Of a stretch of DNA of 64,000 nt, positions 49,282 to 54,518 are shown piece by piece. Each line of letters starts with the position of its first letter. Positions within the stretch are counted from its first letter, which is position 1. Under the pieces are notes generated by a model, which saw only the letters and a list, made by a program, of their open reading frames with translations, made no database searches and had not been told where the DNA came from. The translations under genes were made by a program, and so were the position numbers. Source of the DNA: Ascoidea asiatica JCM 7603 (lineage: Eukaryota; Fungi; Ascomycota); the NCBI GenBank assembly GCA_001600695.1, contig BCKQ01000003.1:1028654-1092653 (forward strand), written 5' to 3'.

Positions 49282-50649
49282 TTATTTAGGAATAAGATTA
49301 AATAATATCTTATTATTAGAATTATTTTCAAACTGATTGAAAGAAATCAATACCCTTTCATTTAATTCATCTCTTATAAGTTTTAAATTGTTTCCGAATA
49401 TTGTCTTTCTTGGAGGTTCTCGACCAAACAAATCTGAGATTGCATATATTTCAACAACTTTTCCAGAGGCAACAATAAGATGATTATTTGAAACACTCGC
49501 TTTTTCACAACTGATATTGAAATATAATATATTCTTTATGCTTAAAACACGTCCATGAGAATCACAAATTATTGCTAGTAATGAAAAGATAATAATTATT
49601 GTATCATTATCTAAAGAAAGAACAGTAATAGGTTTAGTTGTATCAGATTTAAAAATGTCTTTATTAAGTGGTTCAATTTCTTCTCTGGTAAATAAATTTT
49701 TACTAAAAGAAGGAATTGTTCTAATGCTGTTAAGATTCAATAAATCTAAAAGTTGAAAATTTCTTTCTAAACCACAAATGAAATGAAATTTGTTTAAAAT
49801 TGTAATACTAGAACAATTTCCTGGTAATATTATACTTTCCAATAAACTTGGTTTAAATACAATTGTTTCAGGAGGTATTGTATAAATCAGAATAAAGGAA
49901 TTAACAGCTGCAGAAGATCCCGAGAATCTAGTTTTGACAATAAATAAAAATAAACATCCCTCACTAAAACCAGTTTTAAAGAATTTCAAATCTTCAACAA
50001 ATTCATTAATTTTAAAATCAATAATCTTATTTTGTTCATTTTTAAATAAATTTTTAACTTTACAATATTTTAATTTATTTTTAATAGTCATTAATAAAAG
50101 ATCATTACTTTTTATGTATTGTAATTGAGTTATGTTTTGAATATTATTAATCGGACCCCAATATTCTGGAAATATACTTGGACAATTTATATAAAGAGCA
50201 TCTTTAGTTGCAACTAAATGATATTCCATTGATTCAAAGATTACAGAACAAGTACAACGTATTTCACCAATTAATGGGCAATTTTTTAATTTATCAAATT
50301 TTGAAAGAAAAGAATTAGAATTAGAATTAGAATTAGAATTAGAATTAGAATTAGAACTGGAATTAGAATCCGAAGTTTTAATTGACTTTATTTTATTATT
50401 ATTAAATAATTTCCTAATATTATTCGAGGAATTTTGATTTGAAGAAATTGAAGATGAAAGAGAATGATTATAAGCAATTGGATTTAATTTGAAAAATTCT
50501 TTATTTTCTTTTGATTTAAAATATTCATCTTTTAATTTTTGAAAAGGTTTTGCTAATTCTTGAATAGGATTTGAACATTCAAAAGAATAAAACTGATTAT
50601 TTAAAATATTTTTAATAATAACTTTATTTTCAATAAAATTAGAATTGGA

Positions 50650-50682
<33 letters not shown>

Positions 50683-52122
50683 TTTAATATTATTATCAAT
50701 TTTTTGAGAAATTGGGATTTCTATAGAAAGATATTCCATTGGAATTGGATCATCTTTAACAATAAAAGTAAAATTATTTTCATCAACAGTACAATAAATT
50801 AAACAATTTGTGAATAAAAAAATTATATCATTTTTAAAAAATTTTTCTAATTTTATACCTTTTAATTTTGATTTTTCAATTGGAATTATTATATATTTAT
50901 TTAATAACATTTGATATAAATTTGTATTAATATTACCTTTATAAGTTGATTTAAAGATTAATCTTGATTTTATAACTTTACTTAAAGAAGAAATTTTATA
51001 TTTTTTAATTAAATTATTTAAAATATAAAAATTAGATTGAGTTAAAAGGTAAATATTAATTTCATTATTTGAATTTAAATTTATAAATTTTTTTAAAGAA
51101 TTAAAATAAATTAATGAATTTATATTAAAAGAATCTAAATTATTAAAAATTTGATAAAAAGAATTTTCATTAATTAAATTTTTTTTAATAATTTTTAATT
51201 TCCAATTTATAAAATTTATTGAAAATTTTGAATTTAAAAAATTTTTTAAATAAAATTTTATAAAAAATTTTAAATTTGAAAAATTTAAAATAAATTCAAT
51301 CCAATGAGATTGAGAAATTGAGATGAAATTATTAAAGATTTTAATAATTGAGAATAAATTTAAAAAAATTGAAATTGAATGATTAATTAATTCAGATAAT
51401 GGATTAATTAATTCAATTTTATAAAAATTATATAAATTTGAAAATGAATTTATAAAAATTGAATAAAAATTATTTAAATTATATGGTTTAAAATAATTTT
51501 TATCATTAATTAATAATAAATCATTAGAAATTAATAAGACTTTATTAATTAAATTAAAAAATTCGAATTGAGTTTTAATTAAAGAATAAATTATATTTTG
51601 TTCTTCAATTTCAATTGAATTTTCATTATTTAAATTTGATAAATAATCAGATTTTAAATTCCAAAAAGTTTGCCATGAATTATTTGATAGAATTTTATGA
51701 AATATTGAATCATAAGATAATGAAGATATATTAGTATTAGTATTAGTATTGGAGTTTATATTTGTATTAAGAGTATTAAGAGTATCAGCGGTAATATTAT
51801 TTTCATTTTGAAAAGAGATTGAATTAAAAGAAGTTTTACTTAAATCTCTTAAATGATAAAATTGTTTTTTAAATTCATTATTATTATTATTATTATTATC
51901 ATTAAAAGAATATTGAAAAGAATCTTGAGAATCATTTGAATTTAAAAGAGAAATTGGTTCTTTATTTACTTTTGGTACAAGTAATAAATCTAAATTTACT
52001 GTTGAATTTACATTGATATTATAATTTGAATTTGAAGTATTATCAGTATTAGGAAGATTATTGACATTATTTGAATTTGAATTTGAATTTGAATTTGAAG
52101 AAGTTTTAGTTAGCAAAGACAT
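49282..52122 (-). CDS. Diverged Rom1/Rom2/Tus1-like protein (DH-like, PH-like and CNH domains)
   Basis: QNIIYSLIKTQ resembles a DH start; IIFLFTNCLI..PIPMEYLSI resembles the Rom/Tus PH domain; the C-terminal beta-rich region (ITQLQYI, FFKTG, KPITV, CDSHG, VVEIY) resembles CNH. Confidence 0.65.
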
Positions 52123-52660
52123 ATTATATTATATTATATTGTATAGAATTGTAAACATTGATTCTTGAATAAGATTTAATAAATATTGAATGAAGAAAAT
52201 TAAAAGGATTAATTTATATTCTTTTAATATATTAAAAAGATTTTAAAAGAACAAAGAAAGTAAAAGGAATTAAAGAAAATGACTAAATTCTATTTACAGA
52301 TAATGAATATAAAAGATAATTGTTAGTTCTATAGCCTCTTCATCAGGAGAATTTAATAAAGATAACGAAATTCAAGTTGTTGAAAAGTATATTATATTCT
52401 TTTTTATGTTCTTTATTTCATATCATTTCATATCATTTCAGATTATTATTATTATTATTTGATCCATTTTTTATATATTCAGGTTAAATCTAAGGTTAAA
52501 GTCCTAATAAAAGGATAATTTCGATGAGTTTTAACAGTAAAAGGAGTATCAAGAGACAAAAGAGACAAAGGAGACAAAGGAAAACAGAAAAACAGAAAAA
52601 CACGTTAAAACACCATAAAGCAGGAAGGCTTTTGAAGCTTCAGTGTTGCAAATGGCAGTG

Positions 52661-52704: not shown

Positions 52705-53182
52705 CTCTGTTCCTGGGCTCTGGTAGACAAGCACCGCACACGCCACAAAACACAGCCCACACAAGCCATCACAAGCCATAACAATAATATAAAATAAAAG
52801 GAACCGTGTAGCTGGCGTCGGGATATTGCACCACAAGACATGGAGCTGCGTACGCTGCATTATTCCAAACAAGGCATTAGAACGTCAGCTCAGGCAGTCA
52901 ATGAGAGCTACCAAACATATGGTTTCAAGAGTGAAAATACCAAAATTACTGTTCAATGTTTATGAAAAAAATACTTCTTTTAATTTTAATTAATAATTGC
53001 AAATATCTTTTTACTGCAGTTAATTGATAAAAAATTTCAATTTCTGTTTCAAATATGTGAAAAATTATTTATTAAATATAAAAGTATGGGGTATTGAAGA
53101 TAAAATTACTATTTTAAGTATGAAATATAATGAAATTTTTTGAACTTTATATCATTATAATTATTATTATTATTATTACTTA

Positions 53183-53434
53183 CTATTTAACTTTTCTACC
53201 TCCACTAATTTTTAAAACAAGATAAATTACAGAATTATCTTTAATATTATAAGATTTTAATGAATTATTATTATCTTCTAATCTTTTACCAGAATAAAAA
53301 AGTCTTTGTTTTTCTTTTTCAATTCCAATTTCTTTGAAAAGTTTATCTTTAATAACACCTAGAAATTCCTCTTCTGAAATATTTTCAATAATTAATAATG
53401 TTACTTCACTTAACGATTTAATTGTAAGCTTCAT
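53183..53434 (-). CDS. Diverged ubiquitin-like protein with C-terminal Gly-Gly plus RKVK extension, 83 aa
   Basis: Aligns with ubiquitin end to end: KSLS, IKDKL, GI..KQRLFYSGKRLED, SLKSYNI..SVIYLVLKISGG. Confidence 0.88.
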   Translation of the reverse strand: MKLTIKSLSEVTLLIIENISEEEFLGVIKDKLFKEIGIEKEKQRLFYSGKRLEDNNNSLKSYNIKDNSVIYLVLKISGGRKVK

Positions 53435-53543: not shown

Positions 53544-53779
53544 ATCCATTCCAAACTACTTTTACCTCATCGCTTCTTTTTCTTTTTCTTTTGCTTCTGT
53601 TTTTCGGATCTCCTGAATCCGCTTCTGGTGTTCCGTCCGGTTATACCTTCCATATTCACGGAAACACCACTAATAATACCGGTGGTAGTACTACTTACTA
53701 CAGTCAATTTCCCATAAATTTCCTATTTATTACATAAAATTTCATTTTTATATACTATTGAAATTTTAAATATCAAATA

Positions 53780-54139
53780 TCAAATATCAACATCTTTCAT
53801 TCCAGTAACATAAATTTTAACTTTTAAATAAATAATTGAATCATTATCAATTTTATAATATCCTAAATCATAATTATCTTTAAGTAATTTACCATGATAA
53901 AATAAAATTTGTTTCTCTTTTTCAATACCAATCCTTTCATAAATTTTATTTTTAATAATTCCAATCATATCTTTTTTTATAAGATTTTCAATTTCCATTA
54001 TTTGAACTTCACTTAATGATTTAATTATAATTTTAAATTTTGGTTTAATTAAAAATTTAAATTCTTCAATTTTAGGATAAATTAAAATATTTTGACGAAT
54101 TGTTGAAATATTTTCAAATTTTTTTGTTAATTTTGACAT
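53780..54139 (-). CDS. Tandem paralogous ubiquitin-like protein with an N-terminal extension and no di-glycine, 119 aa
   Basis: Shares IKSLSEV, IEN, IGIEKEKQ, LFYxGK and SxIYL with the neighbouring gene. Ends KIYVTGMKDVDI. Confidence 0.82.
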   Translation of the reverse strand: MSKLTKKFENISTIRQNILIYPKIEEFKFLIKPKFKIIIKSLSEVQIMEIENLIKKDMIGIIKNKIYERIGIEKEKQILFYHGKLLKDNYDLGYYKIDNDSIIYLKVKIYVTGMKDVDI

Positions 54140-54518
54140 ATCTATTATATTATATAATATAATTATATTATACTTTATATTTCCTTCTAAGCTTATATTT
54201 ATTTTATCTTTATAAAATCAATTAAATATAATTCATACTCCTTTCATTACTTCACCAATTCTCACTCTCATCTCACATTTATTTTTTTATTCTGCTAAAA
54301 GAGTTAAAAAAACTGGTTTATAAATTAAAATTCGCGGTAATCAAACCCGGGTAACTTCAAAAAAAATTATTATTTTATTTTCAAAAACGTCTCAATGCGC
54401 CACTTCTTCCCTAATTAGGAAATGCCTATAAAGAAGAACATAAAAATTACCATAATTGGAAAATTATTATATTTCTTCCAATTTCTATTTATTATAAACT
54501 ATTTAATTATTTGATTAA

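What the first reader, a model, noticed from the sequence alone, without database searches (positions are those of the whole stretch)
53183..53434. Candidate new conjugatable ubiquitin-like modifier
Seen: a stand-alone 83-aa ubiquitin-fold ORF ending LVLKISGG-RKVK. Known: a Gly-Gly followed by a short tail is how ubiquitin, Rub1/NEDD8 and SUMO precursors look. Ubiquitin and Rub1 are strongly conserved (KTLTG..GIPP..LRGG) and this protein is far from both. It also does not resemble Smt3, Urm1, Hub1, Atg8 or Atg12. By-eye alignment to ubiquitin: L8, R42, G47, K48 and V70 kept; I44>F, H68>Y, K63>D, R72>K, R74>S. Inference: this is a lineage-specific modifier. A basic residue at 72 would favour the ubiquitin E1 over the NEDD8 E1, and the altered hydrophobic patch and tail could change reader and protease specificity.
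Basis: partly seen in the sequence, partly recalled or inferred. Interest (0 to 1): 0.9.

Follow-up and report, generated by a model that had tools for sequence, protein, structure and literature searches.

The report
Orphan ubiquitin offshoot with glycine tail
This yeast has, besides its normal ubiquitin and Rub1 genes, a far-diverged ubiquitin-shaped gene that selection has kept intact with the Gly-Gly end used to attach such tags to proteins, so it may be a new protein tag, but attachment is not shown.

Summary
The 83-aa ORF (53183-53434, minus strand) is real. It has a ubiquitin fold (pLDDT 88.5; 1.4 A rmsd to ubiquitin), 34% identity to ubiquitin, and ends in Gly-Gly plus four residues. 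It is not this species' Rub1: the genome (probably Ascoidea asiatica) has canonical ubiquitin genes, a three-intron RUB1, SMT3 and HUB1 elsewhere. It is not alone: an old tandem paralogue 345 bp upstream (53% identical) lacks Gly-Gly, Arg42 and Val70. The pair evolved under purifying selection (dN/dS of 1 rejected, p<0.001; neutral survival without a stop about 0.3%), so these are not drifting pseudogenes. No dedicated E1 or E2 exists; E1 gates are canonical, and Lys72 points away from the Rub1 E1. Best reading (about 45%): a lineage-restricted ubiquitin offshoot that is clipped after Gly-Gly and borrows Uba1, poorly. Lys72 and Ser74 are changes reported to weaken activation or transfer, so a non-conjugated binder or decoy is nearly as likely. 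No orthologue was found, but Ascoidea relatives seem absent from the databases. The scan had not reported this protein on other DNA; it had noted the paralogue in this window.

The parts
53183..53434 (-). 83-aa ubiquitin-like ORF (the finding); intronless; no CUG codon
53198..53434 (-). Predicted mature ubiquitin-fold protein, residues 1-79, if cut after Gly-Gly
   Evidence: AlphaFold2 model; Foldseek top hits all ubiquitin; the cut itself is inferred
53198..53203 (-). Gly-Gly codons (residues 78-79 = ubiquitin 75-76)
53186..53197 (-). Four-residue basic tail after Gly-Gly, disordered in the model (pLDDT < 50)
53210..53212 (-). Lys at the E1 gate position (ubiquitin Arg72, Rub1 Thr72)
   Evidence: PMC3731359
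53303..53305 (-). Arg42 equivalent, kept here and lost in the paralogue
53550..53700 (.). GC-rich patch (up to 46% against about 17%) between the two ORFs; promoter-like, as upstream of neighbouring genes
   Evidence: function inferred
53780..54139 (-). Tandem paralogue, 119 aa: about 35-aa N-terminal extension plus ubiquitin fold, without Gly-Gly, Arg42 or Val70
54250..54450 (.). Weaker GC-rich patch upstream of the paralogue with one Reb1-like 8-mer at 54347-54354 (0.08 expected in the window)
   Evidence: function inferred
53178..53183 (-). 5' splice-donor consensus hexamer overlapping the last base of the stop codon; use unproven

Best explanation
An old duplicate of ubiquitin (less likely of Rub1) escaped ubiquitin's extreme conservation, drifted under the genome's AT pressure while keeping its fold, and was then duplicated in tandem. 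This copy kept the activation face (L8, R42, G47, V70, L71, basic 72, Gly-Gly); its neighbour lost it. Most likely it is made as a precursor, clipped after Gly79 by Yuh1 or a USP, and charged at low efficiency by the only ubiquitin E1, Uba1, giving a minor variant tag: a single modification or a chain cap that I44-patch readers and deubiquitinases see differently. Shown: ORF, fold, selection on the pair, canonical Ub/Rub1 elsewhere, no extra E1. Inferred: expression, clipping, charging, conjugation, targets.
For: Fold. Purifying selection between the paralogues: codon models reject dN/dS = 1 (p 8e-4 to 1e-10); second codon positions differ at 12/74 against 31/74 first positions (p 0.001); 5 of 6 four-fold sites differ; neutral stop-free survival 0.002-0.004. 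Gly-Gly kept: 3.4% under neutral drift from ubiquitin; 0 of 8 ubiquitin-derived repeats under 45% identity and 4 of 30 under 60% keep it. Of ubiquitin's GC-rich-codon residues, six outside the E1 face and the two structural glycines are all lost while R42, G75, G76 stay (3/5 against 0/6, p 0.06, post hoc). Where the paralogues differ, this copy holds the ubiquitin residue at T12, R42, V70, L71, G76 (p 0.075, post hoc). Uba3 keeps the gate Arg that rejects Lys72; the Uba1 pocket is canonical; Yuh1 is intact (PMC3731359).
Against: Uba1 selections retained Arg72 in all clones and non-native residue 74 blocked E2-to-E3 transfer (PMC3731359); Ub R72K is activated less well. The LRGG-type tail read by ubiquitin proteases is changed at 72, 73 and 74, so clipping is uncertain (own knowledge of DUB subsites). 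No co-diverged E1, E2 or UCH. No orthologue to show that Gly-Gly is conserved. The two Gly-Gly enrichment tests are post hoc and not significant at 0.05. Selection was measured on the pair, not on this copy alone.
Confidence: 0.45

Rival explanations
1. A functional but non-conjugated ubiquitin mimic. Both paralogues act by binding (decoy or regulator of a ubiquitin-binding protein, E1 or deubiquitinase); Gly-Gly is a leftover or fits an active site without productive transfer.
For: The paralogue keeps the fold without Gly-Gly, so the family can be useful without conjugation. Both share the changed surface (F44, Y68, K72, I73, the charged 37-40 loop). K72 and S74 weaken activation and transfer. 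The same genome holds another ubiquitin-derived domain without Gly-Gly (L009).
Against: R42, V70 and Gly-Gly are kept together only in this copy and are rarely kept in equally diverged ubiquitin repeats.
Confidence: 0.33
2. A duplicate now under relaxed selection or silent, with the selection signal dating from the past.
For: Strong shift to AT-rich-codon residues (FYMINK 0.43 against 0.27 in ubiquitin); the genome sheds ubiquitin copies (pseudogene at L006); simple NG86 dN/dS is only about 0.6; no expression data.
Against: Both frames are open after about 30% nucleotide divergence in 80% AT DNA; core residues are kept; each has a promoter-like GC patch and an ordinary start context. The true pseudogene L006 gained a stop while still otherwise identical to ubiquitin.
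Confidence: 0.12
3. A second Rub1-like modifier that runs through Uba3-Ula1 and Ubc12.
For: Residues 2-4 and 45 match this species' Rub1 (7 of 35 diagnostic sites against 9 for ubiquitin); the tree cannot separate a ubiquitin from a Rub1 origin (AU p 0.52).
Against: Lys72 is selected against by the NEDD8 E1 (PMC3731359) and the gate Arg is present; BLOSUM sum at diagnostic sites 53 to ubiquitin against 19 to Rub1; canonical RUB1 exists.
Confidence: 0.05
4. The ORF is the first exon of a ubiquitin-like fusion, spliced at the donor that overlaps its stop codon.
For: Donor consensus at 53183; weak branch at 52880 with acceptors at 52855/52846 gives an in-frame 80-83 aa extension.
Against: That extension has GC3 0.50 against 0.03-0.08 in real genes here and lies in the next gene's GC-rich upstream patch; the only strong branch point (52326) leads to an acceptor that restores a stop, so the protein is unchanged.
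Confidence: 0.05

Closest known systems
Ubiquitin (yeast UBI1-4 type)
   Same: Beta-grasp fold, 1.4 A rmsd to 1UBQ; 26 of 76 positions identical; L8, R42, G47, K48, V70, Gly-Gly, K6, K27, K29 kept; precursor-like tail.
   Different: 34% identity where real copies here are identical to each other; I44F, H68Y, R72K, L73I, R74S; K11, K33, K63 lost; not fused to a ribosomal protein, not a polymer.
Rub1/NEDD8
   Same: Free-standing single unit with Gly-Gly and a short tail; similar N-terminal residues and Tyr45.
   Different: Basic residue 72 instead of Thr/Ala; intronless; the species' own RUB1 (three introns, Thr72) is on another contig.
UbKEKS from human UBBP4 (PMC7066184)
   Same: A ubiquitin duplicate that acts as a variant tag through existing machinery; the closest model for how it would work.
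   Different: UbKEKS differs from ubiquitin at 4 residues; this one at about 50, including the tail and the I44 patch.
Divergent ubiquitins of Plasmodium and Giardia (PMC10457151)
   Same: Escape from ubiquitin conservation with the fold kept.
   Different: Those are heads of RPS27a or RPL40 fusions, thought to chaperone the ribosomal protein; this one is free-standing and more diverged than the RPL40 cases.
Non-conjugated ubiquitin-like proteins and domains (Hub1, Dsk2/Rad23 heads)
   Same: Similar level of identity to ubiquitin; the paralogue is of this non-conjugated kind.
   Different: They lack Gly-Gly in register; this genome's Hub1, Dsk2, Rad23, Ddi1 and Ubp6 are elsewhere.

Membership tests
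Conjugated (type I) ubiquitin-like modifiers | Beta-grasp fold | tested here: met
   Pfam PF00240; model pLDDT 88.5, built on an alignment of ubiquitin-like hits, so not fully independent; Foldseek TM 0.84-0.91 to ubiquitin
Conjugated (type I) ubiquitin-like modifiers | C-terminal Gly-Gly in register, exposed on a flexible tail | tested here: met
   Residues 78-79 align to ubiquitin 75-76; last strand ends at 74
Conjugated (type I) ubiquitin-like modifiers | Expressed as RNA and protein | not tested
Conjugated (type I) ubiquitin-like modifiers | Precursor cleaved after Gly-Gly | not testable with these tools
   Yuh1 with catalytic residues and about 15 USPs are present; tail subsites are changed
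Conjugated (type I) ubiquitin-like modifiers | E1 thioester and isopeptide conjugates | not testable with these tools
   Needs biochemistry
Conjugated (type I) ubiquitin-like modifiers | Dedicated E1/E2 pair | tested here: not met
   One each of Uba1, Uba2, Aos1, Uba3, Uba4, Atg7 and a Tcd-type protein, named by eye from the translations; an ordinary E2 set. Ula1 was not scored, so counts are lower bounds
Conjugated (type I) ubiquitin-like modifiers | Gly-Gly conserved among orthologues | tested here: inconclusive
   No orthologue found; the only relative, the paralogue, lacks it
Ubiquitin proper | Near-invariant 76-residue sequence, LRLRGG tail, seven lysines, L8-I44-V70 patch | tested here: not met
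   34% identity; four of seven lysines; F44; changed tail
Rub1/NEDD8 | Small or uncharged residue 72; being the species' RUB1 orthologue | tested here: not met
   Lys72; canonical RUB1 at L013
SUMO/Smt3 | N-terminal extension, acidic surface, Rad60-SLD as best family | tested here: not met
   Ubiquitin family far stronger; Smt3 and a second SUMO are elsewhere and form their own clade
Ubiquitin pseudogene | Stops, frameshifts or neutral divergence | tested here: not met
   Open frame; dN/dS = 1 rejected

The most novel reading that the evidence does not exclude
A budding yeast has evolved a new covalent modifier from ubiquitin that is clipped, charged by Uba1 despite a Lys72/Ser74 tail and attached to its own targets, with the tandem paralogue that lacks Gly-Gly acting as its non-conjugated regulator: a young modifier caught before it gained its own E1.
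Probability: 0.25. Interest if true: 0.85.

Novelty: new variant of a known kind. Interest (0 to 1): 0.55.

Why it matters
The set of ubiquitin-like tags in budding yeasts is regarded as fixed (own knowledge). A selected, free-standing ubiquitin offshoot with Gly-Gly would be a living intermediate in how new tags (such as NEDD8 or ISG15) split from ubiquitin before they gain their own enzymes, and a natural test of how far Uba1 and ubiquitin proteases tolerate changes at 72-74. It is cheap to test in baker's yeast, has no CUG codon to confuse expression, and public proteomes of the probable species exist. If it is not conjugated it is one more orphan ubiquitin-fold pair, of modest interest.

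Tried and rejected
Being the species' Rub1: rejected. Opposite-strand or frame artefact: plus strand is full of stops. Fusion of the two paralogues into one ISG15/FAT10-like double domain: the paralogue ends in a stop, with no donor inside it and no branch point between them. Remnant of a ribosomal S31 fusion behind the tail: downstream frames show no S31; the likeness of the basic tail to the start of S31 is only four residues. Homologue searches: word-index search with the protein and with the two-paralogue alignment, nothing; exhaustive search returned only multi-repeat ubiquitin-like proteins at 28-42% identity in its best 150, a ranking that would hide a single-domain orthologue; metagenome and viral contigs, nothing; ESM Atlas gave generic ubiquitin-like clusters. 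Synteny through PUF6 in Saccharomycopsis crataegensis: different neighbours, no such gene within 8 kb. No Ascoidea Puf6 was named among the best 120 hits, so these blanks say little about close relatives. Trees group the pair firmly but do not place it. The bacterial promoter scan is not applicable.

Full report
Observation. The minus strand of 53183-53434 is an uninterrupted ATG-to-TAG frame of 83 residues ending in Gly-Gly plus four residues. It matches Pfam ubiquitin PF00240 at E 4.4e-15. AlphaFold2, given an alignment of ubiquitin-like hits, returns a beta-grasp at mean pLDDT 88.5 with a disordered tail, and Foldseek ranks ubiquitin chains first (1UBQ rmsd 1.4 A). In addition L73 is Ile, and K11, K33 and K63 are lost while K6, K27, K29 and K48 stay.

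Organism. The genome has 20.3 Mb in 71 contigs; the Ascoidea asiatica assembly has 71 records (PMC6041473), and neighbouring genes are budding-yeast genes. The species call is an inference. The ORF has no CUG codon, so that species' ambiguous code does not affect it.

Not Rub1, not another known tag. A whole-genome search finds a four-unit polyubiquitin, ubiquitin-S31, ubiquitin-L40, Smt3, a second divergent SUMO, Hub1, Dsk2, Rad23, Ddi1 and Ubp6 heads (named by eye from translations), and a three-intron RUB1 with Thr72 and its own Gly-Gly tail. The RUB1 exons were joined only inside local scripts for pairwise comparison and trees; no search was run with the joined model.

The tandem partner. 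A 119-aa paralogue lies 345 bp upstream on the same strand, 53% identical over the domain, folded in the model, with a low-confidence N-terminal extension and no Gly-Gly. The two form a firm clade and share the altered surface (F44, Y68, K72, I73, charged 37-40 loop). Each has its own GC-rich upstream patch like other genes here. Origin: at sites where ubiquitin and Rub1 differ, the protein matches ubiquitin at 9 and Rub1 at 7, BLOSUM sums 53 against 19; the tree cannot tell the two apart (AU p 0.52). A ubiquitin origin is favoured, not shown.

Selection. Between the paralogues 67 of 222 bases differ: 31 first, 12 second and 24 third positions (p 0.001 for first against second); 5 of 6 four-fold sites differ, so the duplication is old. 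Four codon models reject dN/dS = 1 (p 8e-4 to 1e-10); the value itself is not reliable because synonymous sites are saturated, and NG86 gives about 0.6. In neutral simulations with local base composition, staying free of stops has probability 0.002-0.004 between the paralogues and 0.0006 from ubiquitin. By contrast the genome's true ubiquitin pseudogene took a stop while otherwise identical to ubiquitin. The pair is or was functional as protein.

Is Gly-Gly itself selected? Suggestive only. Neutral retention from ubiquitin is 3.4%. Among diverged ubiquitin-type repeats, 0 of 8 under 45% identity and 4 of 30 under 60% keep it in register (a biased sample). AT pressure removed G10, P37, P38, A46, G53 and R54 but not R42, G75, G76 (p 0.06), and where the paralogues differ this copy holds ubiquitin's T12, R42, V70, L71 and G76 while the partner holds ubiquitin's core residues (p 0.075). 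Both tests are post hoc, and the list of E1-facing residues is from my own knowledge. Without orthologues this is as far as sequence can go.

Machinery. The ThiF search finds single Uba1, Uba2, Aos1, Uba3, Uba4, Atg7 and a Tcd-type protein; the E2 set is ordinary apart from one E2-like ORF without the active-site motif; there is one UCH, Yuh1, with its catalytic residues. So any conjugation must borrow existing enzymes. Uba3 keeps the gate Arg and Uba1 the Asn/Gln/Tyr/Asp pocket (compared with the residues named in PMC3731359). That paper reports that the NEDD8 E1 selects against Arg, Lys and His at 72, that all ubiquitin-E1-selected variants kept Arg72, that both E1s are relaxed at 71, 73 and 74, and that replacing Arg74 blocks E2-to-E3 transfer. 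Ub R72K is activated with reduced efficiency, and Rub1 routed through the ubiquitin E1 tends to cap chains (10.1101/2020.06.18.159145). So Uba1 is the only plausible E1, but the protein would be a poor substrate, and clipping of the tail is not assured.

Mechanism and odds. Best reading (0.45): precursor clipped after Gly79, weakly charged by Uba1, minor single or chain-capping tag with altered readers. Rivals: non-conjugated mimic or decoy (0.33), relaxed or silent duplicate (0.12), Rub1-type route (0.05), first exon of a fusion (0.05). For the last, a donor consensus overlaps the stop codon, but the in-frame extension has GC3 0.50 against 0.03-0.08 in real genes and the only strong branch point leads to a restored stop.

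Distribution. No orthologue was found in any collection, and the PUF6 neighbourhood of Saccharomycopsis crataegensis lacks the gene. These blanks are weak: the searches need shared words or were swamped by polyubiquitins, and no Ascoidea protein was named even for Puf6.

I did not resend or trim it and did not use read laying, so expression and splicing are untested.

Comparison and novelty. It would work like UbKEKS (PMC7066184), a ubiquitin duplicate used as a variant tag, but is far more diverged; divergent protist ubiquitins are ribosomal fusions (PMC10457151). It fails membership of ubiquitin, Rub1 and SUMO, and meets the sequence and fold criteria of a conjugated modifier but none of the functional ones yet. 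I found no paper on it.

Noticed in passing
window 53780-54139 (-): The paralogue's N-terminal extension shares an exact in-frame 14-base stretch with the start region of the 83-aa gene (54104-54117 and 53375-53388; codon-shuffle p 0.02); it may be the remnant of a third partial copy.
   Followed up: partly
window 53183 and 52283-52326 (-): A donor consensus overlaps the ORF's stop codon; a strong branch point at 52326 with acceptors at 52290/52283 has no canonical donor between 52900 and 52122. Joining 53183 to 52290 restores a stop. Could be an 894-nt intron at the stop codon or chance.
   Followed up: partly
L056 (G000:C3:359726-360109, -): E2-fold ORF of about 280 aa (PF00179 E 4e-7) with no HPN motif or catalytic Cys visible; an orphan inactive E2-like protein.
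   Followed up: partly
L058-L063 (G000 C11, C13, C14, C23 twice, C37): Ulp/C48 SUMO-protease family has five clear members plus a fragment, together with a second divergent SUMO (L018): the SUMO system looks expanded in this genome.
   Followed up: no
L009 (G000:C3:402896-403102, -): Long protein ending in a ubiquitin-derived domain, 47% identical to ubiquitin, cut off before the Gly-Gly tail: a second independent ubiquitin offshoot.
   Followed up: partly
L006 (G000:C8:254695-254910, -): Young ubiquitin pseudogene: no start Met, one TAA at Gln31, otherwise identical protein.
   Followed up: yes
G000:C25 and C31: UBC4-type E2 and a USP gene occur with identical scores on both contigs at similar spacing; probably a duplicated segment or an assembly haplotig.
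   Followed up: no
window 49282-52122 (-): 946-aa Asn-rich ORF just downstream with no Pfam match at E 0.1; by eye perhaps a very diverged Rho-GEF/CNH-type protein, not tested.
   Followed up: no
L013 (G000:C4, about 1033250-1033810): RUB1 has three introns and two 18-nt first exons, which simple ORF callers would miss.
   Followed up: yes
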